From the IMG/VR virus record IMGVR_UViG_3300043449_002710, positions 124,001 to 188,000 of that record: a DNA stretch of 64,000 nucleotides; one strand, written 5' to 3'. Below are positions 1-30,212 of this stretch, piece by piece; position 1 is the stretch's first letter; every line of letters begins with the position of its first letter. Under the pieces are notes generated by a model. That model saw only the letters and a program-made list of their open reading frames with translations. It searched no databases and had not been told where the DNA came from. The translations under genes were made by a program, and so were the position numbers.

Positions 1-339
1 AGAGTGAAAGATGTTGTCGCCTAAGATCAAACAGACTGGGGAATCTTGTAAGAACTCAGCCCCAAGCACAAAAGCCTGGGCGATCCCCTCAGGCCTAGGC
101 TGTTCGACATACGAAAGCTCAACCCCAAAATCCGAACCATCCCCTAAGAGGGTTTGGATGCGGGGCAGGTCTTGAGGTGAGCTGATCACTAGGATCTCTC
201 GGATGTCTGCAAGCATCAGAGTTGAAAGTGGGTAATAAATGGCGGGCTTGTCATAGACGGGCAAAAGCTGTTTGTTCACCGCTTTGGTGAGCGGGTAAAG
301 CCTTGTCCCACTTCCTCCAGCCAAAACAATCCCTTTCAT
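1..339 (-). CDS. rfbA: Glucose-1-phosphate thymidylyltransferase (runs off window); signature loop altered
   Basis: Manual translation [53 protein letters not shown]...[12 protein letters not shown]...LILGDNIF; ATG overlaps the rfbB stop (ATGA). Confidence 0.92.
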
Positions 340-1352
340 TTGGATCTCCTCATCGTCACTGCCTGACACCAAGCCTCGTTTTCGAGATACCACTGCACGG
401 TGTCTTTCAACCCCGCTTCAAAATTCGAATACTTGCGCTTAAAACCTAATTCTCGCTCCGCCAAAGAGTCGTCAATCGCATAGCGGTGGTCATGACCTAG
501 CCTGTCTGTCACGAATTTGATCGCGCTTTCATGCGGTTTCCCATCGGAGCGCGGGTGCATTTGATCGAGTTCTTGGCAAATCGTTTTGACGACCTCTCTA
601 TTGTTTCTTTCGGATCTTCCGCCAAAACAATAAGTGGCCCCAGGTCTTCCTTTTTCCAAAGCCAAGGAAATGCCTCGGCAGTGATCCTCGACATGAATCC
701 AGTCTCGAATATTCCCACCGTCTCCATAAAGAGGGAGGTATTTGTCGGAAAGAGCGCAAGTGATCATGTAGGGAATGAGCTTCTCTGGGAATTGTCTTGG
801 TCCATAATTGTTTGAGCAGTTGGTGATGATTGTAGGCAGTCTATAAGTATGATGCCAAGCGCGGACCAACATATCACCTGAAGCTTTGGAAGCCGAGTAA
901 GGAGAGTTAGGCAGGTATGGGCTTTCTTCTGTGAAAAATCCTGTTGAGCCTAAAGAACCGTAAACCTCATCGGTTGAGACTTGGAGAAACTTGAAGTCTT
1001 TTTTCCTGCCTTCGGTATTCCAATATTCCAAAGAAGCCTGCAAGAGAGTGAAGACGCCTTGGATATTGGTTTCGATGAAAGCAGACGGATGATCAATGGA
1101 GCGATCGACATGGGATTCTGCAGCGAAGTTCACCACCGCATCCACAGAATATCGATTCAAGATCCCGCTCACCAAAAAAGAATCACAGATGTTCCCTGTG
1201 ACAAAGTCTAGCTCCAAGCCCTCTAGGTTTTCTCTGTGTCCCGCGTAGGTCAGAGCATCGAGCACGACGATCTGATCGCCTTGCTCTAGTCTTTGACGAA
1301 CAAAGGTGCTTCCAATAAACCCAGCCGCCCCAGTCACAAGAAGAGTCGCCAT
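336..1352 (-). CDS. rfbB: dTDP-glucose 4,6-dehydratase
   Basis: [42 protein letters not shown] motifs. Confidence 0.97.
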
Positions 1353-1765: not shown

Positions 1766-2311
1766 TTATTGTTTTTTCACCCCGTAGAAATATAAATCCC
1801 TAGGATAAGAATTCACGAAAAAAGCAAACTCACTGAAAATGGCGTCCACGTGCAAGACTTGGCGAATATCTTTTTCGGTCAAATTCTTATAGTAATCAAA
1901 CCAATCGCCATGCGCCGCCAAGAGCGGGGCAGAGTTAGGATCTGTCCTGCGCGTGCCGTGTTCTGGCCTGCCTTCAGTTGCGCAGGTGAAAAGAAACAAC
2001 CCACCTGGGGTCAGCATTCGAACGATGTTCTGAAGTGAAAGCGCGTAGTGCTGATCGTGCTCGAAGCACTCTGTTGAAATGATGGTGTCGTAAGACCCGT
2101 CAGGGGAATCCAATTCGTGAGCTTTGCAGACTTTATCTACGTTTTTCCCCTCACCCACATCGATTCCAAAGTAAGAACAATTCTCAAACAAGAACCTATT
2201 GTTCCCATTGATGTCCAAAGACCCCACATCGAGTACCCGTTTTCCAACGAAGTGCTCTGGAAGCTTGGCCTTAACTCTCTTACAAAAATCCATCTGTTGT
2301 GGGTGCGCCAT
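1766..2311 (-). CDS. Class I SAM-dependent methyltransferase
   Basis: VLDVGSLDING, YDTIISTECFEHD, LTPGGLF; start moved to MAHPQQ at 2311 after SD GAGGGG. Confidence 0.85.
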   Translation of the reverse strand: MAHPQQMDFCKRVKAKLPEHFVGKRVLDVGSLDINGNNRFLFENCSYFGIDVGEGKNVDKVCKAHELDSPDGSYDTIISTECFEHDQHYALSLQNIVRMLTPGGLFLFTCATEGRPEHGTRRTDPNSAPLLAAHGDWFDYYKNLTEKDIRQVLHVDAIFSEFAFFVNSYPRDLYFYGVKKQ

Positions 2312-2340
2312 CCCCTCAATTAACCAAAATCGAAACGGTT

Positions 2341-2559
2341 TTAACCTAACTCTTGGCGGATTTGTCTGAAGGCCGACATCCAATTACGGGTAGATCTCGG
2401 GTCATCGCTTCGGGTTTGGCGAGGGACCACAATCACTTTACGGTCTTTGACCCACATCTCGCCGTGGCGGACTCTGCGCACGTAGACAAAACCCTCTTCT
2501 CGTAAGAGCCTGATCTTGTCTCGGTACTTCGGGGCCTGCTTGATCATGGGCCAATTCAT
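2341..2559 (-). CDS. HicA-like small protein
   Basis: LLREEGFVYVRRVRHGEMWVKDRKVIVVP pattern, 72 aa. Confidence 0.5.
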   Translation of the reverse strand: MNWPMIKQAPKYRDKIRLLREEGFVYVRRVRHGEMWVKDRKVIVVPRQTRSDDPRSTRNWMSAFRQIRQELG

Positions 2560-3528: not shown

Positions 3529-3927
3529 CTACCTGTGCTTGCGCGGTTTGCGGTGGTTGGCTTCTTCTTTCGTAACGAGGGCTTTGAAATAGCTCGCCCA
3601 TTTCTTATCCACCGGATTCTTTTCACAAAACTGTAGCAATAACTGAACGATTCTTTCCAAGCCATAAGTTCCTACAATTTCTTCCATAGTCTGAAGATCT
3701 GTCTTGGTAAATTTCCGAGTTTGTTCTTCAATCGTTTGTCTATTTTCCAAGAGAAACGTCACGTACTCGTTTAAAGTCATGGTGCTGCCATTGTTTTGAA
3801 TCTCCTTCTGGAGATCCATTTTCAGCTCGCTTTTCAACGTGGGGTCTAGTCTGAGAAACAACGGCACTTTTTTGATTTTCTTTTTTCTTACCATATCAAA
3901 ATCCCTTCTAGAGAGAGAGATTAACAC
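3529..3927 (-). CDS. Hypothetical protein, possible ribbon-helix-helix DNA-binding N-terminus
   Basis: PLFLRLDPTLKSELK...TLNEYVTFLL pattern; true start possibly MVRKKK. Confidence 0.45.
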   Translation of the reverse strand: MLISLSRRDFDMVRKKKIKKVPLFLRLDPTLKSELKMDLQKEIQNNGSTMTLNEYVTFLLENRQTIEEQTRKFTKTDLQTMEEIVGTYGLERIVQLLLQFCEKNPVDKKWASYFKALVTKEEANHRKPRKHR

Positions 3928-4236
3928 TGGTAGTCAAAAAAATGCTATCAAAAAATGCTATCTACTTTTAAACTTATTTAATTAAACCATAAGGGTTTTA
4001 ATAACTTGTAAAATATCATCGGCATCGAACTGATCGAACACTTCCGCGTCCTTTAGGCTCGCGGCGATCTTCTGATCCAAGACCTCGTCGGCCTGAGGTT
4101 TCTGCGAGCGCTTTTCCTCTTTGCACACCGGGCAAAGTCTCCAGGCGTTTTTCTGGTTTTTGAGTCTCCGCTCGAAATTCCGATCTACGTCTTCCCAGGC
4201 ACGGGAAACCCCACAAGGCCAAGCTTTGCCCCGCCT

Positions 4237-4536
4237 TTGAGCGTGGTCTGGGATGAAGACGAGGGGGTTTATTTTCTGGTCTTGGACTTTGGCGGCAAGG
4301 GGGATCTCTGGGAGATCAAGCCCAATGGGGATTCTGCCTTCGTCAGCTCCTTCACAGGCGAGTTCCAACCAAGCCCAGGTCAGATCGTCTATGACGACCA
4401 CGGAAACCGAAACTACAAAGACTATGTCGAGATTGAGGTCATCCGAGCGATCTTAGATATCACCGAGCCCGGGTGGGATGCGCCTCGGCCCGGGGAGCCC
4501 GATTGGGTTGATCCCGATTTAAAAGGCGAGGCCTGA
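4237..4536 (+). CDS. Hypothetical protein
   Basis: Protein-like composition; overlaps antisense ORF 3982..4401, so the real gene is uncertain. Confidence 0.35.
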   Translation: MSVVWDEDEGVYFLVLDFGGKGDLWEIKPNGDSAFVSSFTGEFQPSPGQIVYDDHGNRNYKDYVEIEVIRAILDITEPGWDAPRPGEPDWVDPDLKGEA

Positions 4537-4541
4537 TCTGT

Positions 4542-4751
4542 TCATTCCTGAGTGCAGGCTTCACACTGGCATTTTGTGATTTCAACCAAGCGTTTGAGGC
4601 AAGCGGTGGGGGAATTTTCATGGATCACGTGGGTTGCCGGGTCGCATTGAAATCCGGCCTTCAAATAGACCCAAAAACCATCGCCCAAGCTTCTTTCGTC
4701 CGAGATGGAATCGACACGCTTATCGCTGAGTATTCGCGCCACAGCTTTCAT
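4542..4751 (-). CDS. Small hypothetical protein with C-terminal Cys cluster
   Basis: ORF track; sigma70-like promoter immediately upstream. Confidence 0.55.
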   Translation of the reverse strand: MKAVARILSDKRVDSISDERSLGDGFWVYLKAGFQCDPATHVIHENSPTACLKRLVEITKCQCEACTQE

Positions 4752-4757
4752 AGAAAT

Positions 4758-4785
4758 AGGATAACGCTTAGCGTTACGAAGTCAA
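4758..4785 (-). promoter_or_regulatory. Sigma70-like promoter with palindromic operator
   Basis: TTGACT-16-TATCCT; perfect IR TAACGCT-T-AGCGTTA at 4762..4776. Confidence 0.6.
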
Positions 4786-4808
4786 GGCTAAATGCGCTTA
4801 GGTGAAGC

Positions 4809-6566
4809 TTAATCCTCATCCGATTTGTAGTACGCAAACGGAAGCCCTTTGCAGAGAGTCCCCTTTTTAATCGCCTTGATGATAGCAGCCGATGTCACCC
4901 CCAAAAAGTCGGCTGCGTGTTTAGGTGTGTAAAAACAGATATTCGTGGAAACTACACGGCAAGCGGATCTCAAGGGACGGGCTTTCTTGGGGGCAGAACC
5001 GTTTTCCCTAAGCCACCTAGCCTTGACCTCGGGCCTAGCCTCTCCACGCAGCACGATATTGATCCAATTCTTATCGATACCGAGCTGATCCGCGATCTTG
5101 GCTGACGGAATTCCGAGTGCTTTGAGTTTGAAGGCTTCGAGCAAATCTTCTTCTGGGATTTGGGTGTAGTCTCTTTTTTTTGGTCCATTCCAAGCTTTGA
5201 AGCGTTCAGTCTTTCGTTCTTTACTAATAAACGAATGAATAGACCCAATTTTATACTTTGACTCAATTTCTTTGACCGAGAGATTGTTAATAAAATAATC
5301 TGAAAAAATGGCACGTATCTCTTTTTCAGTTCTTTTTTTCTTCGAAGTATTCACTTCTATATGAGAAAATTTCTTTTTCCGCTCTGGGTCTATTTTCCCA
5401 TTCAGCAAATGATTTACATAGGTACGACTTGTCTTCAATTCACTCGCTATTTCGGATAACGATTTACCAGATTGGAATAAATTAAAAATAGCGTCTTTTT
5501 CAATTTCAGACATAACCCTTGGTCTAGCTAAGGGCCCGTGCTCTTCCTCAAATCTTCTTAGTAAATGAGGCCTTATTTTACCTGCTTGAATATGTTGAAT
5601 ATAACCAGGGCTCACAGATAAAATTTTTGAAATTTGCTTTAAAGATTTGCCTTTTTTTCTAAGAAAAAAGCTATCCATCAAAACCTTATCTGGTATTAAG
5701 TATGACTCGAAATCATACCCTCGATTCACGTTGTACCCGTTCTCAGTGTGATGAGATTTTAGCTTCTCAATCCACAAAGCTTCCTTGTCTTGAAGTTCTT
5801 TCAATGTCGATGCTGTATCTATTTCCTCGATCCAGAAATTTTCTAATCCAATAGATCGAATCGCTGAATGTATCGGCAAGGGGCTTCCGTTTGTGGAGTC
5901 ATAAGTATGTCGCTGAAATCTGCGAGTTAAGGCCTGAGTAGTCATTCCAACGTAAAGTTTATCGTTTATCTTGTTTTTGATACAATAAATGCTTCCGTGT
6001 ACTTCGGGGTTGCTCGGTTTCAATACATACTTGAAAATTATTTTGGGGGTTTCTTCCACTCGAACCAAGCCAATAGACTCAGCGTATTCTTTTTCTTTTG
6101 TGGACAACCTAACCGCTTTTTGCCAAATATTTTTTTTGTGAATGTAAGAATTTTTTGAATCCGTGTAATGATAAGATGACCGAGTTTTTCCAATTTCTAA
6201 AAAATTGGACGCTTTATAAATAGCTCCACTATGGCCAACTGTAGGATCTGCATAAGATATAACACTGCTGTATTGGGTATTAAGCCTCAACCACTTCAAG
6301 CATTTGCTAATAAAAAAACTAGCTGTGTTTTTGGGCGCTTCTGGCAGAATGACTAACCTACTGAGTTCAATGGCCCGACCATACCTGAGCGCGGATTGAT
6401 GCCTGCTAAAAGAAGAAAAAGTACAGGCACCTAAAAACTTATTTTCTGAATCAAACAAACCAAAACAATGAATGACCGATCGGGAATAAGTCTTAGAATA
6501 ATGATTCTCCGCGATAAATTTTCCTACTTTTTGATCGAACTCAATTCGTCTAACTTCTAGGTTCAT
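4809..6566 (-). CDS. Mom-family (GNAT-like DNA modification) domain fused to GIY-YIG endonuclease with multiple HTH repeats
   Basis: HYS, IELSRLV, ISYADPTVGHSGAIYKASNF (Mom); GSIYCIKNKINDKLYVGMTT..RRF..H, GYN (GIY-YIG); repeated GKSLxxIxxxL HTH units. Confidence 0.8.
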   Translation of the reverse strand: MNLEVRRIEFDQKVGKFIAENHYSKTYSRSVIHCFGLFDSENKFLGACTFSSFSRHQSALRYGRAIELSRLVILPEAPKNTASFFISKCLKWLRLNTQYSSVISYADPTVGHSGAIYKASNFLEIGKTRSSYHYTDSKNSYIHKKNIWQKAVRLSTKEKEYAESIGLVRVEETPKIIFKYVLKPSNPEVHGSIYCIKNKINDKLYVGMTTQALTRRFQRHTYDSTNGSPLPIHSAIRSIGLENFWIEEIDTASTLKELQDKEALWIEKLKSHHTENGYNVNRGYDFESYLIPDKVLMDSFFLRKKGKSLKQISKILSVSPGYIQHIQAGKIRPHLLRRFEEEHGPLARPRVMSEIEKDAIFNLFQSGKSLSEIASELKTSRTYVNHLLNGKIDPERKKKFSHIEVNTSKKKRTEKEIRAIFSDYFINNLSVKEIESKYKIGSIHSFISKERKTERFKAWNGPKKRDYTQIPEEDLLEAFKLKALGIPSAKIADQLGIDKNWINIVLRGEARPEVKARWLRENGSAPKKARPLRSACRVVSTNICFYTPKHAADFLGVTSAAIIKAIKKGTLCKGLPFAYYKSDED

Positions 6567-6603
6567 TCAATAAATCATATCACTGGAAAACACTTAAAAC
6601 AAA

Positions 6604-6640
6604 TAAAAAAGCCGGGAAGGTTTCTCCCCGGCTTTCTTAA
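6604..6640. terminator. Rho-independent terminator after the capsid gene
   Basis: AAAGCCGGG...CCCGGCTTT stem with flanking A/T tract. Confidence 0.8.
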
Positions 6641-6660
6641 TACTTCTATATACTTAGCAA

Positions 6661-7770
6661 TTATACACGAACTCCGTGTACGCACGCTCTGCCGTTGCCG
6701 ATGGCCAAGCCCATGATTTTCTGCATGTACCAGCCGCGCTCAGGCTTGCCGATCAAGTACATATTGATCGGAGCAGTGGTCACGTCTTTACGAACCGTTT
6801 GAGCGCCGAGAACGTTCGGAGCGGAGAGGAAGTAGAATTCCCCTGCGTTCAGAACCTTCAAGGTGTCATAACGGAAGCCGTCCGTGATGAGGTTGACGCC
6901 GTAGATCGAACCCAGGGAACCCGACATGATGATCTCACGCTTGGTGACCGGATCGAAGTAGGTGGCGAATTCTGGATCAGCCAGGATGTCGTTCCAGAGG
7001 TCCATAGCAATTAATCCAGTTGCGGCTGGGTTACCCCATTGCTGGATCTGTGTACGAGCCTGAGCGAAAACGCTCGGGGAGAAAGTGGTGAAGCCGACGA
7101 GGTCGTTGTACGAAGTAGCAGCGACATCGAGGAGCGACTTGAACACTTGGTCTTCTTTCACCATGAGCTGCTCCAGGCCGTCGATGTATTTGTCATCGAG
7201 GAGGTCGCCTGGGGCCTGTTCAAGTTCACGGTCTTCGATCAGAATGTGAGCCTTGACGTAGAACTCATCTGGGAAGAGGTAGGACTGATTGATCTGGGAT
7301 GTAGCCATTCCAGAATCAGTGACAGCGTAGAAAGCCATCACGTCCTTTTTACGGATGCGCAGACGACCGATTTCGCCTTTTTTGAGGTCCTTGCGCATGA
7401 CGCACTTGCGGAGGAAGCCATCGCGACCCATAGCCTCTAAAATTTCGTCCCCTAAGACTTCCCCGACAACGCGCCATGTTTCGCCGGTCTTGTCGGCCAT
7501 AGCAGCTTCAACGAGTTCTGCACGCTGATTGGCGAACTCGTGCTGTTCCTGGACTTCGCCCGAGGTAGCAGCCAAGGCGAGAGCGCCGATACGCTGCATG
7601 AGTTCCTTTTTGGAACCAGCGTTGATTTCGCCGTTCTTGTCTTCGAAAGAACCAGCGCCAGCTTCGACTTTACCGGACTTATTGATGTGCAGAGCAGTTT
7701 TGCTCTCGGACAGTTCGTTGCCCGAACGGGTCACAACGACCGTCTTTTTTGTGTAAGGATTGGTAGCCAT
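6661..7770 (-). CDS. Major capsid protein (jumbo phage type)
   Basis: 369 aa, strongly biased codons, own terminator, HK97-like pattern (GxLGxIYGVNLITDGFR..L.VL..GE.Y); same strand as scaffold-like gene. Confidence 0.72.
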   Translation of the reverse strand: MATNPYTKKTVVVTRSGNELSESKTALHINKSGKVEAGAGSFEDKNGEINAGSKKELMQRIGALALAATSGEVQEQHEFANQRAELVEAAMADKTGETWRVVGEVLGDEILEAMGRDGFLRKCVMRKDLKKGEIGRLRIRKKDVMAFYAVTDSGMATSQINQSYLFPDEFYVKAHILIEDRELEQAPGDLLDDKYIDGLEQLMVKEDQVFKSLLDVAATSYNDLVGFTTFSPSVFAQARTQIQQWGNPAATGLIAMDLWNDILADPEFATYFDPVTKREIIMSGSLGSIYGVNLITDGFRYDTLKVLNAGEFYFLSAPNVLGAQTVRKDVTTAPINMYLIGKPERGWYMQKIMGLAIGNGRACVHGVRV

Positions 7771-7978
7771 GGTAGCTCTCCTAAAGTTGTTAGAATCGAT
7801 TCAAATTTTCAGGTTGAGCCGTAATTCAATTATTCAGGGCTACTTCCTGTCAGCAGCCTTTGGCCCTTCTTAATTGGGAAATAATACTGTGTTGGGAGGT
7901 CTTTTAATTTTTAGGTAGGAGGGGGTCTTGAGCTAATGAAAAAGGGAGATGGTGTTATCCATCTCCCTTTCATTTTGG

Positions 7979-9316
7979 TTACCCAGAATACGGAACAGTG
8001 ACGCTATTGAAGGAGAAAGAAGTTCTGGCTTTTGCTGCAAATTGGATTTGGACATAGCCATAGTTGGCGGGAAGAGCTTGGTCCGCCAACAAGGTCGCTG
8101 CCTGAGACAAAGACGCTGTCTGAGAATAATTAACATCAGGCATATCCATATTGGCAGAATTCATTCCGTCCATATACCCCATATCCATCGTGTAATCCAT
8201 GTTGTTAGTGTAGTTCTGACCCACTGCAGCCGCAATCCCAGGGTAATTTTGCAAAAGGTACTGCTTTTGAGTTGGATATAAGTTGGCATCTGCCCAGAAA
8301 GCTACGGGATCGTTCCACTGTGCTAAAACCCAATCGATATAAAACGCATTCACATATTTGAAAAGGATATCGCTTGTAATGCCATTTACAGTCTCCCCGG
8401 CTGTAAAATTTGAGGTGGAGGCACTAGCATAAGAAAGGGAAGTGAGCTTCACCGTTTTACCTACGAGTTGTGGAACAACGCTAGTGAAACTAGCAGAATA
8501 ATAAGACTGACCAAATCTAATACCCGGAGACCAAGTTGAAGAATCAATATCACCATTGATCAGTTTATTTGAGACTGAATAGTATGATAAATTCTTACCG
8601 CTAACTTCATTACCACTACCGTTTCGAACGTACTCAAAATCCCAATAATCGCCAGCGTTAACTTGCAATGGCTGAGCTAAAGCCGCCATTCCGGTAAAAT
8701 AAAAAGCTTCTGCTAATGGACCATTAAAAATAGTGGAGTTGGACTGATCTTTAACAGTAAGAGAAACGGATGAAGGCAAAAACTGAATGTACTCAATATA
8801 CATCGATTGAGCGAAAGTGACCCTAAAACTAATTACATCACCCGCATTAAGATTTAATTGGTCTCCAGCAAACGATAGATTATACGAGTTGAATAGCTGG
8901 GTAGCTGGGTTGGTATTGTAGATAGTAACAGAGTTTCCGCCTGCTGCAGCAGGAGCAATACCAGTGGAGGCAGCTAAGTTCGGGTAAGTAACCAAAAGCT
9001 TGCCACGATTGATGACTAAGCTACCGCCATCGAAGTCGATAAGCATGATCTTGATGATCTGGAAGTCAGATCTCGATTTCGCGGAGAACTCAATGTAATC
9101 GGTAGGCGTGGCATCAGCAAAGTTGAAAACAAGAGTCTTGCTTTGACCGCCTAAAGTAGAATGATAATCCACCAAGACTTGTTTGATATTTTCCCCGCTG
9201 TTCTGAGTCCAGAAGCTATCAGCTTGGACTTCAGGCAATGCGAGAACATCAGCTTTGATCAAGGTGACCTGAGCAGGAGCACCTTTGGTTACGGCTGGAA
9301 CATTTAAAAGCGACAT
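7979..9316 (-). CDS. Putative virion structural/decoration protein
   Basis: Beta-rich S/T/N composition; GTTATTATTA at 9353..9362 and SD upstream. Confidence 0.5.
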   Translation of the reverse strand: MSLLNVPAVTKGAPAQVTLIKADVLALPEVQADSFWTQNSGENIKQVLVDYHSTLGGQSKTLVFNFADATPTDYIEFSAKSRSDFQIIKIMLIDFDGGSLVINRGKLLVTYPNLAASTGIAPAAAGGNSVTIYNTNPATQLFNSYNLSFAGDQLNLNAGDVISFRVTFAQSMYIEYIQFLPSSVSLTVKDQSNSTIFNGPLAEAFYFTGMAALAQPLQVNAGDYWDFEYVRNGSGNEVSGKNLSYYSVSNKLINGDIDSSTWSPGIRFGQSYYSASFTSVVPQLVGKTVKLTSLSYASASTSNFTAGETVNGITSDILFKYVNAFYIDWVLAQWNDPVAFWADANLYPTQKQYLLQNYPGIAAAVGQNYTNNMDYTMDMGYMDGMNSANMDMPDVNYSQTASLSQAATLLADQALPANYGYVQIQFAAKARTSFSFNSVTVPYSG

Positions 9317-9340
9317 GAGGCATTCTCCCTCGGTAGGTAA

Positions 9341-9878
9341 TTAAGGTTTATATAATAATAACCCGAGTCTAAGCTCGATCATTTGCAGGTTGCTTTCTGG
9401 AACGTAAACCCCATTTCTTCCTAACCAAATTTCAACGAAGTCATCACCAGAGTCTGTTTTGGCTACTTGTAGAGAAAATTGCAGGTTGTATGTTCCAGGG
9501 TACGCAAAAATAATATGCGATCCCGAAACAGAAACCCCATGAGCCTCGTCTGTTTGGTTATACGTGATCGTATTGATAGTGGAAGAATTTAACTGAGTAA
9601 CATTACTGAAAAAAGAACCGTAATATCCAAGCGCACCACCAGCCCCGGGCTCACCCATAGGTCCGGTAGGTCCGGTAGATCCAGTAAGTCCGGCAGGCCC
9701 ACTGGGTCACGTGGGTCCAACGACACCCATATCTCCGTCTTCGATGGCTTGCTTCAATGTTTTAGACAGACTGTTTGCTGTGACAAAAATCTTGTCGTCA
9801 TTGGTGGGAAGACGCGCTCAAACCTTGGAGAGTGAGTTCTGAGATGCTTTTGATATCTTCGTTCTGGATTTTGGACAT
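9341..9878 (-). pseudogene. Degraded collagen-containing fibre gene, paralog of 48466..48927
   Basis: MSKIQNEDIKSISEL, frameshift near 9805, then DDKIFVTANSLSKTLKQAIEDGD; in-frame TGA at 9707..9709 at a collagen Gly position; C-terminus looks truncated. Confidence 0.8.
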
Positions 9879-9915
9879 ACACTAAAAATAACAATGAAAA
9901 AGTTCCTGCTAGATG

Positions 9916-10533
9916 CTATTTAGTTTCGAGATCACTATCCCAGACGATCTTCACATTGGGTGCTTTGAGTAGGCCTGTGGGCGAAATGTAGGGCCGACCT
10001 AGACCAGCTAAATCCTCAAGATTCGCCCCGATTCGAAATTCAAAATCGGATTGATAGACCAATTCGGAGCAGTACAGCGCCTCTACTCCAAGTTGAAAAG
10101 CCGTGTCGTAAGTTGCGTTGTGGAAACTTAAGCACTTTTCAATGACCTTTTCTATGTAAGGCGGATCGAAAAAAATACACTCTAGAATCATCACTCGATC
10201 CGACTCCTTGCAGATGTCAAAGAAGTCCGACTTGGTGAAATTGGTGTGGGTCATTTCAGCCACTTCAAAAAAGTCCCCTTGAGATCTCAGTCCCACGCAA
10301 AGAGCGGCGTGGGTAAATTCGCCCCCGATCAAAACGGTGGTGAGCTTTCGCTTGTCTTTGGCGAGTAAAATATGCCCAGGCTTTAAAAATTTATATCCCG
10401 CATGATACTTCCACCCACGTAGACTTGTGTAATAAGTCGTGAAACGGATGTAAGGGATTACGTGTAACAGCAGCCATTTAAAAAATTTAGTGTTGGTAAA
10501 TCCCACGATCAATGGTTTTAAAAATTTCAGCAT
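9916..10533 (-). CDS. Permuted papain-like NlpC/P60 (YiiX/YebB-like) hydrolase
   Basis: LKPGHILL, FTHAAL (His) preceding LYCSELV (Cys). Confidence 0.75.
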   Translation of the reverse strand: MLKFLKPLIVGFTNTKFFKWLLLHVIPYIRFTTYYTSLRGWKYHAGYKFLKPGHILLAKDKRKLTTVLIGGEFTHAALCVGLRSQGDFFEVAEMTHTNFTKSDFFDICKESDRVMILECIFFDPPYIEKVIEKCLSFHNATYDTAFQLGVEALYCSELVYQSDFEFRIGANLEDLAGLGRPYISPTGLLKAPNVKIVWDSDLETK

Positions 10534-10631
10534 TGCCCACCCCTATTAAAAATAATAGCCGATCGGCATGACGCCTAGCTTCAATTTGGGATCTCGGGGG
10601 CAAGGGTATTTTTAATGTTGGAGTGCTATGG

Positions 10632-11126
10632 ATGGCAAAGGTCAAACGGAGCAAAAAAGGCAAAAAGATCTTAAAAACCAATATTCATGGGGACACCTGG
10701 ACGTATTCCGAAGTAACCCCACAAGAAATGGTCGGCATCTGTGGAGAAGAAGTTGAGGGGCTGACCAATTTGGATGAGCACCATATCTACATCAATGCGG
10801 ACTATCTTAATCAAGATGTCGTGATCCACGAATTGGTTCACGCTTACAAGAGCTATCTCTGTTTGGAGACAACCAACTTGACCGGAGAACAGCTCGAAGA
10901 GATCTATTGCGAGTTCTTCAGCAAGAACTGGCACAAGATTATCACTAAAAGTGCTCAGATCCTTTTGGATCTGCGCGACATCACTGAGTCCTCCGATGAG
11001 TTTTTAAATCTGGTGGAGTCTTTCATCCTCCTAAAAGCCTACGAGGGAAAGGGGAAAAAAACATTCACCCAAGAAGATCTTCAAGCAGCTAAACTTTTAC
11101 TGCGGGCTTTTTTAGAGACAACTTAA
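10632..11126 (+). CDS. HExxH zinc-metallopeptidase-like protein
   Basis: GLT...HIYIN...VVIHELVHAY...EE. Confidence 0.65.
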   Translation: MAKVKRSKKGKKILKTNIHGDTWTYSEVTPQEMVGICGEEVEGLTNLDEHHIYINADYLNQDVVIHELVHAYKSYLCLETTNLTGEQLEEIYCEFFSKNWHKIITKSAQILLDLRDITESSDEFLNLVESFILLKAYEGKGKKTFTQEDLQAAKLLLRAFLETT

Positions 11127-11893
11127 CCCCGTAAAACGGACATCACCGTGGGGTAGGAAGTGATCGCTTTCTTTCTTCTTTTGTAAGGTTTCAAGGAGCG
11201 AATCGTTGAAATCAGCTCCGAAACATTAGGAACGCTGTCAGAAACATTGGGAATGCTAATTATGTTTAAAAGTTTTGGACCATTATGCTTCGGCCTGACC
11301 CAGAGATCCAATTTCTTTTGGTCATCATATTTGATGCCAACTTGATGACCGCAGTCTAAATCAATGAAAAAAGTGGGCGTGGACCATCCGTCTCTTGTGC
11401 CTGCTTCGTGAATTTTGACAATTTTAATACCAGCGTTTTCTAATTCTTGAACTAGCTTTTTCCCCTCGCGATTGATGCCCGCAAAATCATAGGGTGGCGC
11501 AGGTGGCGCAGGTGGCTTCTTGGGTTTACCGTTGAGTTCATCCCTTTGGTCTTGATCATAGAAGTAGCCTTGGGTTTCATCGTGTTTGCTGAATTCTAGA
11601 TCTTTGTATTTTTCGTTTTTATAATATTTCTTTTTCACCCATTTTTGAGACGAGTAAACAGACTTAAAACTTGAATCTAGATTCAATTTTTTAAAAACAT
11701 CTTCGGTGGCCTTCAATAAATTGACTTCGCCTTGGGGTGTCACTACCCTACCATAACCGTTATAGATGCCTTCAATCACTGTATCGTCTGGTAAAACGGA
11801 CACGATATGAGATTGCTCTTTGGGAAGTTTCGCCCACGGGTAAACCGGGATGCTTTCGCCAGATTTTGCGCAGAGATTAGAAAAAAAGCCCAC
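11123..11893 (-). CDS. Hypothetical protein with C-terminal YP tag
   Basis: Ends YPTVMSVLRG*; SD GAGGG. Confidence 0.7.
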   Translation of the reverse strand: MGFFSNLCAKSGESIPVYPWAKLPKEQSHIVSVLPDDTVIEGIYNGYGRVVTPQGEVNLLKATEDVFKKLNLDSSFKSVYSSQKWVKKKYYKNEKYKDLEFSKHDETQGYFYDQDQRDELNGKPKKPPAPPAPPYDFAGINREGKKLVQELENAGIKIVKIHEAGTRDGWSTPTFFIDLDCGHQVGIKYDDQKKLDLWVRPKHNGPKLLNIISIPNVSDSVPNVSELISTIRSLKPYKRRKKAITSYPTVMSVLRG

Positions 11894-11908
11894 GTGGATA
11901 CCCTCTTC

Positions 11909-12202
11909 TTAAAGATGTTGAATTCTTTCTTTGACCCTAGGTTTATTTAACAGACTAACCGAGTTGGGAAATAACAACATCAGTTTCCTAATATCTTCCC
12001 CTTTAATCTTCAGTTGCATGGCTGGTTTGTTGAGTTCTTTAGTCAGAGCTTCGATAAAATCGAGCAAACTAAAATGCCCTTCTCTAGAGAGCGCGTTTTG
12101 AAAACGAGAATAAAGATCCGGGGTTGTGATCTTATGCTGCTCGACCGCTTCAATCAGAGTGGAAATCAGATTTACCAAACGCTGCAAGGTTTTTAATTCC
12201 AT
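11909..12202 (-). CDS. Hypothetical protein
   Basis: GTTTATTTT motif just upstream of ATG. Confidence 0.6.
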   Translation of the reverse strand: MELKTLQRLVNLISTLIEAVEQHKITTPDLYSRFQNALSREGHFSLLDFIEALTKELNKPAMQLKIKGEDIRKLMLLFPNSVSLLNKPRVKERIQHL

Positions 12203-12562
12203 GTCTTAGAAAATAAACTAAAAAATACCGGATTGATTTTTGTTCGAGTGAGTTATATAAAGCGCTTATCCAAACAGCTTCTTGATCATCTTGACTGTGA
12301 CGTTGTTGACATACTCTCCCCCTGGGATTCTCCTCCCAGGGGGTGCATAAATCATTTCCAATACAATTCTGCTTGGTGACATGAAAGATGTGGAGCGCGG
12401 AAGTTTGATTCTGGCATTGATGAAATTCCTTTATCCTACTCTGAAATCCGTGGACCATACTGGTTCCGTTTCACAAGTCCAGGTTCAACTAACACACAAA
12501 GAGATTGAAGAGATTTAAATGAAATTTGAAGCCCGCACCGCGCTGGAGGGGAAGGCAAGCGA

Positions 12563-12877
12563 ATGAATAAGCGGCGACAGATGGCGGAAAATTCTGCACC
12601 AAACCACGCGGGCACGAAAGCATACCGCGTTCAGTGGATAAAAGCCTTTGAGGCTGGATGGGAGGCAGCGTTGAACGAGCTAGAATCAGAAAACGCCCGC
12701 CTGAAAGAGGCTCTGGCTTGGTACGGCCAAGAGTGGCTATACGACATAAAGGAATTTGTGTGTGCAGCCACTCTCAGCATTGCTGGAGAACTTCCTAAAC
12801 AGGAAACAATCCAGGGGAACCCCATTCAGCACGATAGAGGGAAGCGTGCCCGCGCCGCGCTGGAGGGTGGGGAGTGA
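12563..12877 (+). CDS. Small phage protein with ENARL/ARAALEG cassette motifs
   Basis: AFEAGW, ENARLKEAL, ARAALEG. Confidence 0.6.
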   Translation: MNKRRQMAENSAPNHAGTKAYRVQWIKAFEAGWEAALNELESENARLKEALAWYGQEWLYDIKEFVCAATLSIAGELPKQETIQGNPIQHDRGKRARAALEGGE

Positions 12878-13239
12878 GCTTGTTTAGATGGACCATTATT
12901 CCAAAAAAGGAACTAGAGCGACTAAGGCATTTTGAAGCTAAAGCGGCTAGGTTCTGGGAGGTTCACAGATGGTTTTCTGGCTGGAAAGACTTGAACATCA
13001 TCTGGGAATACATTTTTAACGATACATACTTTGGAGGAATTGAAGAGGCGCGTAAAAAATACGCCGAAGCGAGAGATACCGACGTTTACAACTCCCCGAC
13101 TAAAGGCGACATGGGTTCACTATCTAAAGAAAACGCTCGACTTCGGGAGGCGTTGGAAAAGATCTCCAACCTATCGCTCTATCAAGACGAACTCAATGAG
13201 GCAGTGGTCATAGCCCGAGCTGCGCTGGAGGGGAAATGA
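12874..13239 (+). CDS. Small phage protein with ENARL/ARAALEG cassette motifs
   Basis: ENARLREALEKI..ARAALEGK; start/stop overlaps with both neighbours. Confidence 0.6.
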   Translation: MSLFRWTIIPKKELERLRHFEAKAARFWEVHRWFSGWKDLNIIWEYIFNDTYFGGIEEARKKYAEARDTDVYNSPTKGDMGSLSKENARLREALEKISNLSLYQDELNEAVVIARAALEGK

Positions 13240-13448
13240 CATTTCAAGAAGAAATTGAATTTTTAACAGACAAAATAAACTTGTTGGCAAAAAGCTACAT
13301 GGACATTTCATTGGCTTACTATAAAGCGATTGAGCATTTGACAGTCATTAAAAAGCATCATTGTGAATGTTGCGAACTAAACAAAGGTGGAGATTGTAAT
13401 TGTAAATCAGCATTAGCCAAAGACGCGCTCAATGATCTTGACAACTAG
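13236..13448 (+). CDS. Small Cys-rich hypothetical protein
   Basis: Translationally coupled ORF. Confidence 0.5.
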   Translation: MTFQEEIEFLTDKINLLAKSYMDISLAYYKAIEHLTVIKKHHCECCELNKGGDCNCKSALAKDALNDLDN

Positions 13449-13605
13449 AAATTACAAAACGCATTGCAAACGAGGTCACGAATACAACCAAAATAATACT
13501 CGGTATCATTCAAAAACAGGTGGGAGAATTTGTAAAAGATGCAACGCAATCCGAGCGGCTGAATATCGTGCTAGACGCAGAAAAAATTCCCGCAGCCTTA
13601 AATGA
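13432..13605 (+). CDS. Small zinc-finger protein (type found at HNH endonuclease C-termini)
   Basis: Manual translation MILTTRNYKTHCKRGHEY..NTRY....GRICKRC. Confidence 0.55.
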   Translation: MILTTRNYKTHCKRGHEYNQNNTRYHSKTGGRICKRCNAIRAAEYRARRRKNSRSLK

Positions 13606-13779
13606 ACTGGACCGCATTGCTCGCGGTTTGGATCTTCTTCATTCCAAATGAAACCGCATTCGGCACAAATTGAAATCGGGGCCGCGCTTCTTTATGACCA
13701 TTGTCGAGATATCATGGCGGTATGTGGTCGAAATTTTGGCAAGTCTGAATTGATGGCTTACCTTTTTAAAGCGCAATAA
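13568..13779 (+). pseudogene. Truncated, frameshifted fragment of a foreign large terminase
   Basis: KPHSAQIEIG...IMAVCGRNFGKSELMAY (PHxxQ plus Walker A), stop soon after. Confidence 0.65.
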
Positions 13780-13818
13780 AAAAACCCCCGAAGGATTACT
13801 CCCTCGGGGGTTTTTTAT
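13776..13818. terminator. Bidirectional Rho-independent terminator
   Basis: AATAAAAAAACCCCCGA...TCGGGGGTTTTTTATT between convergent genes. Confidence 0.9.
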
Positions 13819-13836: not shown

Positions 13837-14574
13837 TTATCCGATCAGCATCGAGACGCGAAGCATTGCGCCCTGCAGGGAGCCAGAGAGGTCAGGCAAA
13901 GCCAAGACCTTGGCCTGAGGAAGCTCAACGCCTGCGCCACCGATTGTGATGATGCCGTTGTCACCCAAGGTGAGAGCAGCGCCAGTCGAATAGTCCTTCG
14001 AAGGATCGAACTGGTCGGTTGCGATTTCCACATAACCCTTGGCAACGCCGACCAAAGCGAAGTTACCAACGAGGTCGCGGTTGTTCAGAGCGCGTTCGTG
14101 GAAACGCTGACGAGCCTGCTGAACGGTCAGGTTATAGCGATAGAGGAAGTGAACAACCTTGCCAGCATCGCCAGCAGCGAACTTGATCCGGCCACCGACG
14201 AGGTCAACTTTCACGGTGCCTGTAGCAGGTGTAGCCGAGAAAGCGGTTTCGTCGATAGTGAGGTCAGAGCCGCCGACCACCATAGCGCGGTCTGCACCGG
14301 CCACGAGGTTAGCATTGCGGAGGTTGAACACGAGGCTGCCTGTGGCAGGAACTGTGAAAGCTTCGTTAGCCACGGCTGTAGCCGGGAGCATGTACGGGAG
14401 AAGAGCAACGCCAGCGATCTTCTCGGAACCGTCCACAGTAGCTTTCACGCTGACCTTCGAGACGCCGTTTTCAATGGCTTCAACGAGGATCACGCCTTCG
14501 TTTGCGATTTCAGCGCCAGCAGCAACCGGACGCTCAACTTGTTCCTGAATTTTGATCTGTTTACGATCGATCAT
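13837..14574 (-). CDS. Virion structural protein (head decoration/minor capsid-like)
   Basis: Follows scaffold-like gene, SD AAGGAG, biased codons, beta-rich. Confidence 0.55.
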   Translation of the reverse strand: MIDRKQIKIQEQVERPVAAGAEIANEGVILVEAIENGVSKVSVKATVDGSEKIAGVALLPYMLPATAVANEAFTVPATGSLVFNLRNANLVAGADRAMVVGGSDLTIDETAFSATPATGTVKVDLVGGRIKFAAGDAGKVVHFLYRYNLTVQQARQRFHERALNNRDLVGNFALVGVAKGYVEIATDQFDPSKDYSTGAALTLGDNGIITIGGAGVELPQAKVLALPDLSGSLQGAMLRVSMLIG

Positions 14575-30123: not shown

Positions 30124-30212
30124 TGGTGCCGAGGATCGGAGTCGAACCGATACGTCCCTTGCGAAACTCAGGATTTTAAATCCTGTGCGTCTACCAATTT
30201 CGCCACCCCGGC
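30124..30212 (-). tRNA. tRNA-Leu (anticodon TAA), CCA encoded
   Basis: GCCGGGG acceptor, TGGTAGA D loop, CAGGA-TTTAAAA-TCCTG anticodon arm, long variable arm, GTTCGA, ACCA. Confidence 0.95.

What the first reader, a model, noticed from the sequence alone, without database searches (positions are those of the whole stretch)
4809..6566. Mom-type DNA modifier fused to a GIY-YIG nuclease next to the capsid gene
Seen: Mom-family motifs in about the first 180 aa, then GIY-YIG, then 4-5 HTH units. The gene is visibly AT-richer than the flanking MCP gene and lies just past its terminator. Known: Mu Mom modifies adenines against restriction; free-standing GIY-YIG homing endonucleases often sit beside conserved genes. 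Inference: a selfish element that carries its own protective modification (single-chain modify-and-cut), or site-targeted hypermodification.
Basis: partly seen in the sequence, partly recalled or inferred. Interest (0 to 1): 0.62.

Follow-up and report, generated by a model that had tools for sequence, protein, structure and literature searches.

The report
Mom-GIY-YIG homing endonuclease beside capsid gene
A freshwater jumbo phage carries, just after its capsid gene, a mobile nuclease gene whose protein also contains an apparently intact Mom-type DNA-adenine modifying domain, and the same pairing recurs with every major class of homing nuclease, which suggests (untested) that these selfish genes protect their own DNA by modifying it.

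Summary
Window 4809-6566 (-) is one 585-aa ORF. It holds a Mom-family GNAT domain (aa 1-185), a GIY-YIG nuclease (aa 186-290) and five HTH units. It is AT-rich and starts 38 nt after the capsid gene's terminator.

The fusion is not an assembly artefact. About ten 50%-identity clusters from independent metagenomes share the architecture. Neither domain looks dead: all six I-TevI catalytic residues are kept, as are the Mu Mom residues H58, Y59, R111, S124, D149 and Y159. Mu R151 is Thr here, but Thr is the norm in this Mom branch.

The gene behaves like a free-standing homing endonuclease gene. Among phages with 75-91% identical capsid proteins, the same spot holds this gene (in either orientation), an HNH_3 endonuclease, a Hef-type gene, or neither.

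The fusion is not unique. The closest Mom domains are joined to HNH, LAGLIDADG and Vsr-like (Hef-type) nucleases, and this genome has three more Hef-type genes with Mom-related C-termini. Iyer et al. 2021 already noted Mom-REase fusions in jumbo phages. I found no description of the GIY-YIG version.

Best reading (inferred, untested): a single-chain modify-and-cut selfish element. Verdict: real, a new variant of a known kind, moderately interesting.

The parts
4809..6566 (-). Whole gene, 585 aa: Mom - GIY-YIG - 5 x HTH (protein P0001)
6012..6566 (-). Mom-family GNAT domain, aa 1-185. Keeps H22, Y23, R70, S83, D107, Y117 (= Mu Mom H58, Y59, R111, S124, D149, Y159). T109 sits at the Mu R151 position. 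A two-helix insertion (aa 144-164) corresponds to Mu's HTH-like insertion but is shorter.
   Evidence: Pfam; alignment to PDB 8bv8; alignments A2/A3; Foldseek top hit 8bv8, E 4.9e-10
5697..6011 (-). GIY-YIG nuclease domain, aa 186-290. Y194, Y205, R216, H220, E262, N279 correspond to I-TevI Y6, Y17, R27, H31, E75, N90. It follows the Mom domain with almost no linker.
4977..5696 (-). Four tandem three-helix HTH units (aa ~291-530), presumed sequence-specific DNA-binding array
   Evidence: Pfam HTH_23/HTH_3/HTH_31/HTH_7 hits; model helices; conserved in homologs
4809..4976 (-). C-terminal winged HTH (HTH_17-like), aa ~531-585, plus stop codon. This region has higher GC (0.50).
6604..6639 (-). 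Intrinsic-terminator-like hairpin and T-run after the capsid gene. The same element sits after the capsid gene in all relatives examined and marks the insertion hot spot.
6661..7770 (-). Major capsid protein gene (P0002), the conserved neighbour

Best explanation
The gene is a free-standing, I-TevI/Seg-like GIY-YIG homing-endonuclease gene. It sits in an intergenic hot spot just after the capsid gene's terminator, and its protein carries an N-terminal Mom-family GNAT domain that looks catalytically competent. Proposed mechanism: the five-HTH array binds a long specific site. The GIY-YIG domain cuts that site in DNA that lacks the gene, such as co-infecting relatives and possibly other DNA, and recombinational repair then copies the gene in (homing, or marker exclusion). 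The Mom domain is tethered to the same DNA-binding array. By homology with Mu Mom, it would transfer glycine from Gly-tRNA(Gly) to N6 of an adenine in or near the same site, making the carrier genome refractory to its own nuclease. That would solve the self-cleavage problem of a free-standing endonuclease whose insertion does not split its target. Shown here: the domain composition, the intact catalytic residues, recurrence of the architecture, patchy distribution at a hot spot, and the general Mom-homing-nuclease association. Inferred: the DNA-modifying activity, its site-specificity, the protective role, and homing itself.
For: (1) Architecture and intact residues. (2) The fusion is real and conserved. 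P0003 (51% identity), P0004 (47%), P0125-P0129 and P0155 have the same order, and the six GIY-YIG catalytic residues are invariant in all nine. (3) Mobility signature. Relatives with 75-91% identical capsid proteins differ in what follows the capsid terminator. L011 has the fusion in the same orientation and L002 has it inverted. L009 has an HNH_3/NUMOD4 endonuclease. L015 has a Hef-type gene. L014 and L016 have none of these. The fusion proteins are far more diverged (47-53% identity) than the adjacent capsid proteins (77-87%). GC is low over aa 1-460. (4) The link between Mom and homing nucleases is systematic. Of 149 Mom-containing best representatives, about 118 are fused proteins. Pfam finds GIY-YIG, HNH_3, HNH, HNH_5, LAGLIDADG_3, MTES_1575 and Vsr among them. 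N-terminal Mom fusions form one clade with nuclease swapping. The C-terminal domain of Hef-type endonucleases matches the Mom profile (hhalign 98.7%, E 4.6e-16); Hef is cited as a unique homing endonuclease of phage U5 that cleaves nrdB (PMC2988022) and is placed in the Vsr-like family (PMC3239194). (5) The genome holds four Mom-type nuclease fusions and no stand-alone Mom. This fits one modifier per nuclease better than one global modifier. (6) Iyer et al. 2021 (PMC7824862) proposed the same protect-and-attack logic for Mom-REase fusions.
Against: No biochemical data exist for any member of this Mom branch. Mu R151, essential in Mu (PMC13219725), is Thr here. Also missing are the Mu N-terminal tail (residues 11-19, possibly tRNA-binding), the dimer residue W48 and part of the essential HTH-like insertion, so the chemistry or the substrate may differ. 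A tethered modifier and nuclease acting on the same site would race on any DNA in the cell, and nothing here shows how self and non-self are told apart. One family member (P0155) has lost the Mom residues but keeps GIY-YIG intact, so the nuclease can persist without an active Mom. I did not find a clean empty site with conserved flanks, because the region downstream of the capsid gene is rearranged between relatives. The target site is unknown.
Confidence: 0.5

Rival explanations
1. Mobile anti-restriction cargo. The Mom domain modifies phage DNA broadly, as in Mu, to evade host restriction. The homing-endonuclease part only spreads this useful gene between phages, and there is no functional coupling between cutting and modifying.
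For: Mu Mom is a proven anti-restriction enzyme with loose sequence preference (PMC13219725, PMC7261163). Stand-alone Mom genes of the same branch occur in cultured phages such as RaK2 and PMBT8. Homing endonucleases can drag or amplify useful neighbouring genes (PMC13096335, abstract seen).
Against: Cargo only needs adjacency, not an in-frame fusion repeated with five nuclease folds at either terminus. Four Mom-type fusions in one genome would be redundant for a global modifier. The tight junction between Mom and GIY-YIG (aa 181 to 191) suggests joint action.
Confidence: 0.2
2. The Mom domain no longer transfers anything. It has been recruited as a DNA-binding or adenine-flipping recognition module, or as a tRNA-sensing regulatory module, of the endonuclease.
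For: Mu R151 is replaced. The Mu N-terminal tail, W48 and part of the insertion are missing. The Hef-type branch has lost Y59, and some of its members have lost Y159. P0155 shows that decay of the domain is tolerated.
Against: H22, Y23, R70, S83, D107, H112 and Y117 are at least 90% conserved over about 145 diverged relatives, including fused forms. That pattern is typical of a maintained active site, not of a mere binding surface. Thr at the R151 position is shared with stand-alone members of the branch.
Confidence: 0.15
3. A single-chain restriction-modification weapon that is not a homing element. It degrades host or competitor DNA while phage DNA is protected, as Iyer et al. proposed for Mom-REase fusions. 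Its patchy distribution reflects ordinary accessory-gene turnover.
For: PMC7824862. Jumbo-phage context.
Against: A five-HTH array implies a long, rare target rather than frequent restriction-type sites. The architecture is that of I-TevI/Seg-type enzymes. Alternative homing endonucleases occupy the same intergenic spot in relatives. The related Hef family is cited as a homing endonuclease family (PMC2988022).
Confidence: 0.1
4. Artefact: a chimeric assembly or a mis-called ORF joins two separate genes.
For: None found.
Against: The frame is continuous. An independent Logan contig of 36.5 kb is identical over 4300-7800, with no joints. About ten diverged clusters from other samples have the same fused architecture.
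Confidence: 0.01

Closest known systems
Bacteriophage Mu Mom (PDB 8bv8), a tRNA(Gly)-dependent adenine N6 hypermodifying GNAT
   Same: Same Pfam family and fold. H58, Y59, R111, S124, D149 and Y159 are conserved. A helical insertion precedes the last beta-hairpin.
   Different: About 25% identity. R151 is replaced by Thr. The N-terminal ~37 residues and W48 are absent and the insertion is about 20 residues shorter. It is fused to a nuclease and an HTH array, whereas Mu Mom is a stand-alone dimer under Com/Dam control.
I-TevI and the Seg-type free-standing GIY-YIG homing endonucleases of T4-like phages
   Same: GIY-YIG catalytic domain with all six key residues. C-terminal modular DNA-binding region with HTH units. 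Intergenic position next to a conserved gene. AT-rich, patchy distribution.
   Different: The catalytic domain is not N-terminal but preceded by a 185-aa Mom domain. The DNA-binding part is an unusually long five-HTH array. No activity data.
Hef-type (Vsr-like/EDxHD) phage homing endonucleases, and the Mom-REase fusions of jumbo phages (Iyer et al. 2021, PMC7824862)
   Same: A Mom-family domain and a nuclease in one polypeptide, encoded by free-standing mobile genes. Three such genes are in this same genome, and Hef-type genes sit beside Mom-GIY-YIG genes in L002 and L017.
   Different: The domain order is reversed (there the nuclease is N-terminal and Mom C-terminal). The nuclease fold is different (PD-(D/E)xK there, GIY-YIG here). 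DNA binding there uses Zn-ribbon or homing-endonuclease-associated repeats instead of HTHs. The Mom domain there is more diverged: below the Pfam cut-off, with Y59 lost.
Single-chain (type IIG/IIL-like) restriction-modification enzymes
   Same: A modifier and a nuclease share one DNA-recognition module in one chain (functional analogy only).
   Different: No homology. The modifier here is an aminoacyl-transferase-type GNAT rather than a SAM methyltransferase, and there is no known hemi-modification logic.

Membership tests
Mom family (Pfam PF25680) | Profile match above the curated cut-off | tested here: met
   109.8 bits against 27.1, aa 3-182; phrog_1384, E 5.5e-35
Mom family (Pfam PF25680) | GNAT fold closest to the Mu Mom structure | tested here: met
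   AF2 model with pLDDT 89; Foldseek top hits 8bv8_B and 8bv8_A (E 4.9e-10, TM by target 0.66), ahead of other GNATs
Mom family (Pfam PF25680) | Residues essential or important in Mu Mom: H58, Y59, R111, S124, D149, Y159 | tested here: met
   H22, Y23, R70, S83, D107, Y117
Mom family (Pfam PF25680) | Mu R151 (R151A is inactive in Mu) | tested here: not met
   T109. Thr, Ser or Asn is the majority state in all architecture classes of this branch, stand-alone forms included. So this is a branch feature rather than a lesion, and its functional meaning is unknown.
Mom family (Pfam PF25680) | HTH-like insertion before the last strands (essential in Mu) | tested here: inconclusive
   Two helices at aa 144-164 occupy the position, but the segment is about 20 residues shorter and W181 is not conserved
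Mom family (Pfam PF25680) | Gly-tRNA-dependent modification of adenine N6 in dsDNA | not testable with these tools
   Needs expression plus LC-MS or SMRT sequencing
GIY-YIG homing endonucleases (I-TevI/Seg type) | GIY-YIG domain with Y6, Y17, R27, H31, E75, N90 | tested here: met
   Pfam 31.2 bits against 22.6; residue-by-residue alignment to 1mk0/1ln0; invariant in nine family members
GIY-YIG homing endonucleases (I-TevI/Seg type) | Separate C-terminal DNA-binding modules | tested here: met
   Five HTH units; NUMOD1 detected in homolog P0129
GIY-YIG homing endonucleases (I-TevI/Seg type) | Presence/absence polymorphism at a fixed site among close relatives | tested here: met
   Present in the window, L011 and L002. 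Absent in L009, L014, L015 and L016, and apparently in L012, where only 243 bp after the capsid gene are held. Other endonuclease genes occupy the spot in L009 and L015. No clean empty site with both flanks conserved was found.
GIY-YIG homing endonucleases (I-TevI/Seg type) | Site-specific cleavage and gene conversion | not testable with these tools
   Uncultured phage; needs in vitro cleavage mapping
Mom-REase fusions of jumbo phages / Hef-type endonucleases | Mom-family domain and nuclease in one chain | tested here: met
Mom-REase fusions of jumbo phages / Hef-type endonucleases | Nuclease of the PD-(D/E)xK (Vsr-like) fold, N-terminal to Mom | tested here: not met
   The nuclease is GIY-YIG and lies C-terminal to Mom. 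The protein is therefore a parallel variant, not a member.

The most novel reading that the evidence does not exclude
Mom-family domains are the immunity module of free-standing homing endonucleases in general. Tethered to the nuclease's own DNA-binding array, the domain hypermodifies an adenine in the enzyme's target on the carrier genome. This would let GIY-YIG, HNH, LAGLIDADG and Vsr-like/Hef endonucleases target invariant sequences without needing a resistant target allele. It would be a modification-based self/non-self system inside selfish genes, and it would give site-programmable adenine hypermodification.
Probability: 0.3. Interest if true: 0.85.

Novelty: new variant of a known kind. 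Interest (0 to 1): 0.6.

Why it matters
How free-standing homing endonucleases avoid cutting their own genome is usually explained by target-site polymorphism. A built-in modifying domain would be a different and general answer.

The association found here covers every nuclease class, including the long-known Hef family. Cultured phages encode many Hef-like copies (11-12 matching places per Campylobacter phage genome), so the idea can be tested directly.

Mom chemistry was only recently solved (Gly-tRNA-dependent glycyl transfer, PMC13219725). A Mom domain steered by a modular HTH array would be a natural example of sequence-targeted DNA hypermodification, with obvious tool potential.

If the Mom domains instead prove inactive or global, the finding reduces to a domain-architecture note.

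Tried and rejected
- **Megablast of window 3900-8000 against GenBank phages:** no match.
- **tblastn of the whole protein against the same collection:** no record covers 80% or more of it, so no cultured phage in that collection shows this architecture.
- **Two scans of IMG/VR for capsid relatives:** both found nothing. Relatives came from the protein word search instead.
- **Empty-site search:** seven relatives lack or appear to lack the fusion. The DNA downstream of the capsid gene is rearranged between genomes; the conserved 112-aa gene that follows in L009, L014 and L016 lies about 11 kb away in this genome. Exact insertion boundaries could therefore not be drawn.
- **Reads:** only Logan contigs were available. 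X1, probably the source sample, is identical across the stretch with no joints. X2 holds only capsid-gene fragments at 7055-7549. Neither a gene-less allele nor expression of the fusion could be tested.
- **'One domain is dead':** rejected. The R151-to-Thr concern turned out to be a feature of the whole branch.
- **'Assembly artefact':** rejected.
- **'C-terminal GC-rich part is a captured resident gene':** rejected. That part is the best-conserved HTH region with P0003, at 60-64% identity.
- **Literature:** full-text searches for Mom with GIY-YIG, LAGLIDADG or homing endonuclease found nothing beyond Iyer et al. 2021. Iyer 2009, the DOI 10.1093/nar/gkt573 and Sandegren 2005 are not held, so an earlier mention cannot be excluded.
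- **Not attempted:** no complex prediction was run. No target site could be inferred from the capsid 3' ends.
Full report
**1. What is there**

The window is bases 124001-188000 of a 223-kb IMG/VR virus record, estimated 81% complete. It comes from a freshwater metagenome. The capsid protein relates it distantly (30-36% identity) to PaBG-like and Erwinia/Dickeya-type jumbo phages.

On the minus strand, 4809..6566 is a single 585-aa ORF, P0001. Its domains are:

| Region (aa) | Domain | Evidence |
|---|---|---|
| 3-182 | Mom (PF25680) | E 1.8e-31, 109.8 bits vs cut-off 27.1 |
| 191-277 | GIY-YIG (PF01541) | E 2.8e-7, 31.2 bits vs 22.6 |
| ~300-575 | Series of HTH families | |

PHROGs give 'Mom-like DNA modification protein' and 'homing endonuclease'. 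An AlphaFold2 model built on a 70-row alignment is confident (mean pLDDT 89). It shows:
- a GNAT-type domain (aa 4-181);
- a GIY-YIG alpha/beta domain that starts only ten residues later (aa 191-268);
- four three-helix HTH units and a terminal winged HTH.

By Foldseek the best structural match in the PDB is the crystal structure of phage Mu Mom (8bv8, E 4.9e-10), ahead of ordinary GNATs.

The upstream gene 6661..7770(-) is the major capsid protein (phrog_2522, E 8.7e-55). A strong hairpin plus T-run at 6639..6604(-) separates the two genes. No Shine-Dalgarno-like sequence is evident before the ATG.

GC content:

| Region | GC |
|---|---|
| Fusion gene, aa 1-460 | 0.33-0.40 |
| Fusion gene, last 125 codons | 0.50 |
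| Capsid gene | 0.536 |
| Genome | 0.462 |

**2. Are the domains alive, and is the fusion real?**

*Nuclease.* Aligned to I-TevI (1mk0/1ln0), P0001 keeps Y194, Y205, R216, H220, E262 and N279. These correspond to I-TevI Y6, Y17, R27, H31, E75 and N90. All six are invariant in nine diverged family members.

*Mom domain.* Mu residues shown to be essential or important (PMC13219725) compare as follows:
- H58, Y59, R111, S124, D149 and Y159 are conserved, as H22, Y23, R70, S83, D107 and Y117.
- R151 is Thr.

In an alignment of 144 Mom domains from the representative search, Thr/Ser/Asn is the usual residue at the R151 position in stand-alone and fused forms alike, within a D-P-T-x-G-H-x-G-x-I-Y motif. 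H, Y, R, S, D and Y at the other positions are near-invariant. So the Thr is a property of this branch, not a lesion of this gene.

The branch also lacks Mu's N-terminal tail and W48, and has a shorter helical insertion. No member of this branch has, to my knowledge, been assayed, so activity is inferred.

*The fusion is not an artefact.*
- A Logan contig of 36.5 kb is identical across 4300-7800, with no joints.
- The word search found two full-length homologs: P0003 (51% identity) and P0004 (47%).
- The exhaustive representative search found about ten 50%-identity clusters matching both domains: P0003, P0125-P0129, P0141, P0142, P0148 and P0155.

**3. Behaviour in related genomes**

Capsid-protein relatives at 75-91% identity are common in metagenomes. 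In every one examined, the capsid gene ends with a terminator hairpin. What follows it differs:

| Locus (capsid identity) | What follows the capsid terminator |
|---|---|
| Window | Mom-GIY-YIG gene, same orientation as the capsid gene |
| L011 (87%) | Mom-GIY-YIG gene, same orientation |
| L002 (77%) | Mom-GIY-YIG gene inverted, followed by a Hef-type gene |
| L009 (89%) | 165-aa NUMOD4/HNH_3 endonuclease, convergent |
| L015 (79%) | 267-aa Hef-type fragment |
| L014, L016 (81%) | Small unknown ORFs |
| L012 (91%) | Contig ends 243 bp after the capsid gene, on the 3' end of a convergent gene |

The fusion proteins are much more diverged (47-53% identity) than the adjacent capsid proteins (77-87%). 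This patchy, orientation-independent occupancy of one intergenic spot by different endonuclease genes is the usual signature of free-standing homing-endonuclease genes in T4-like phages (PMC2988022).

A clean empty site could not be defined, because the downstream region is rearranged.

In two other contexts the gene lies in small islands of such genes. In L017 it is flanked on both sides by Hef-type genes.

**4. The wider pattern**

The Mom domains closest to P0001 (44-49% identity) are N-terminal domains of proteins of 490-920 aa. Their downstream parts are:
- HNH_3: P0130, P0137, P0140;
- LAGLIDADG_3: P0131, P0136, P0143, P0145;
- both: P0132.

Of the 149 best representatives that contain a Mom domain, 76 have it C-terminal, 35 N-terminal, 7 internal, and 31 are stand-alone length.

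A Pfam tally over the top 109 representatives gives:

| Pfam family | Members |
|---|---|
| Mom | 105 |
| GIY-YIG | 11 |
| MTES_1575 REase | 10 |
| HNH_3 | 9 |
| LAGLIDADG_3 | 7 |
| HNH | 5 |
| Vsr | 5 |
| HNH_5 | 3 |
| DUF559 | 2 |

A quick maximum-likelihood tree of Mom domains puts the N-terminal fusions in one supported clade (SH-aLRT 97). Seven of the nine GIY-YIG-labelled forms in the tree make one subclade (93), and the HNH and LAGLIDADG forms are intermixed. This indicates nuclease swapping behind a conserved Mom module. It is a quick tree only; the careful search did not finish.

The genome itself has three more large genes, at G000 107855-109519, 115820-117583 and 190865-192679. Each has Zn-ribbon or homing-endonuclease-associated repeats, a Vsr-like nuclease and a Mom-related C-terminus. 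They belong to phrog_559/3339 (E down to 1e-100). Their best matches in cultured phages are the 'Hef-like homing endonucleases' of Campylobacter phages, with 11-12 matching places per genome.

A profile of Hef-type C-termini matches a profile of stand-alone Mom proteins with 98.7% probability (E 4.6e-16). Hef is cited as a unique homing endonuclease of phage U5 that cleaves nrdB (PMC2988022). It was later placed in the Vsr-like family (PMC3239194).

The genome has no stand-alone Mom and only one GIY-YIG domain.

**5. How it most likely works**

*Established by sequence:*
- a modular I-TevI-like nuclease with a long five-HTH DNA-binding array;
- a Mom-type GNAT with a maintained active site, joined to it by almost no linker;
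- a mobile-gene distribution;
- a systematic evolutionary association of Mom domains with all homing-nuclease classes.

*Inference:* the two catalytic domains share the DNA-binding array and act on the same locus. The nuclease cuts unmodified copies, which drives homing or excludes competitors. The Mom domain aminoacylates an adenine of that site on the carrier DNA and blocks self-cleavage. This matches the protect-and-attack idea of Iyer et al. 2021 for Mom-REase fusions in jumbo phages (PMC7824862), extended to a homing context.

Four separate Mom-type nucleases in one genome fit site-specific, one-per-nuclease immunity better than redundant global modification. From memory, unverified here: published nucleoside analyses of Campylobacter phages rich in Hef genes reported guanine replacements but not modified adenine. 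That would also argue against global activity.

*Weak points:*
- activity is untested;
- Mu's R151 and tail are missing;
- it is unresolved how a tethered modifier and nuclease discriminate self from non-self;
- one member, P0155, has a decayed Mom domain but an intact nuclease.

*Rivals:* the Mom domain is a global anti-restriction cargo spread by the endonuclease (0.2); it is a non-catalytic recognition or regulatory module (0.15); the protein is a non-homing single-chain restriction-modification weapon (0.1); it is an artefact (0.01).

**6. Novelty and verdict**

Mom-nuclease fusions are known as a kind: Iyer et al. 2021 described them for REase-fold nucleases, and the Hef family carries the domain. 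The GIY-YIG version with N-terminal Mom and an HTH array appears in none of the papers I could search and in none of the 50,697 GenBank phage records. The same searches found no description of the HNH or LAGLIDADG fusions either.

I therefore file it as a new variant of a known kind. It is a genuine feature of moderate-to-good interest (0.6). Its main value is that it exposes a general and testable link between DNA hypermodification and homing endonucleases.

Noticed in passing
outside the window: G000:C1 107855-109519 (+), 115820-117583 (+), 190865-192679 (-) (loci L007 1356-3020, L005 253-2016, L008 2366-4180): Three Hef-type genes of 554-604 aa. Each has Zn-ribbon or homing-endonuclease repeats, a Vsr-like nuclease and a Mom-related C-terminal domain (phrog_559/3339). 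Two of them have lost Y59/Y159 equivalents. Four of the six recognisable endonuclease genes of this genome carry a Mom-type domain.
   Followed up: yes
L017 3079-7794; L002 942-4185: Endonuclease islands. In L017 a Mom-GIY-YIG gene is flanked by two Hef-type genes (491 aa and 497 aa, the latter with DUF7487). In L002 a 494-aa Hef-type gene overlaps the start of the Mom-GIY-YIG gene. The P0003 contig has a gene of more than 475 aa in the same position.
   Followed up: partly
window 4809-5190 versus 5190-6566: Sharp GC step inside the gene. The last ~125 codons (HTH 4-5) have GC 0.50 and GC3 0.54, against 0.33-0.40 upstream, although this part is the best-conserved HTH region with homolog P0003 (60-64% identity). 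Unexplained; possibly a recombination or co-conversion tract boundary.
   Followed up: partly
window 7979-13800: The stretch between the capsid gene and the conserved 245-aa gene (13837-14574) is about 6 kb here but only 0.3-1.4 kb in relatives L009, L011, L012 and L016. It holds a 445-aa ORF (7979-9316) and a 105-aa ORF (9341-9658) that match no family, and further ORFs that I did not scan. This is likely another variable or inserted segment.
   Followed up: no
P0155 (metagenomic homolog, 588 aa): A family member whose Mom domain has lost the H58, Y59 and D149 equivalents while all six GIY-YIG catalytic residues are intact. This shows decay of the modifier with retention of the nuclease.
   Followed up: partly
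window 336-1352 (-), 1766-2383 (-): A nucleotide-sugar epimerase (phrog_540) and a SAM-dependent methyltransferase (phrog_32762) lie a few kb downstream. They may be further nucleic-acid or surface modification functions.
   Followed up: no
window 30124-30212 (-); whole genome: The phage encodes five tRNAs (Thr, Gln, Tyr, Asn, Leu-taa; the Leu gene is in the window) but no tRNA-Gly. Any Mom activity would therefore depend on host Gly-tRNA(Gly).
   Followed up: partly
window 7055-7549: A second freshwater run, labelled metatranscriptomic (X2), holds three short contigs at least 99% identical to part of the capsid gene, with one T>C difference at 7140. It holds nothing over the fusion gene. Too little to speak of expression.
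   Followed up: partly
outside the window: G000:C1 203301-203402 (-), 204432-204566 (+): Two small HNH-domain ORFs (169 and 180 aa) close together. They are the only other recognisable homing-type nucleases in the record.
   Followed up: no
G000:C1 119304-119627 (+), about 4.4-4.7 kb before the window start: This is the homolog of the conserved 112-aa gene that directly follows the capsid locus in L009, L014 and L016. Here it lies about 11 kb away on the opposite strand, which indicates a rearrangement next to the capsid gene in this genome.
   Followed up: partly
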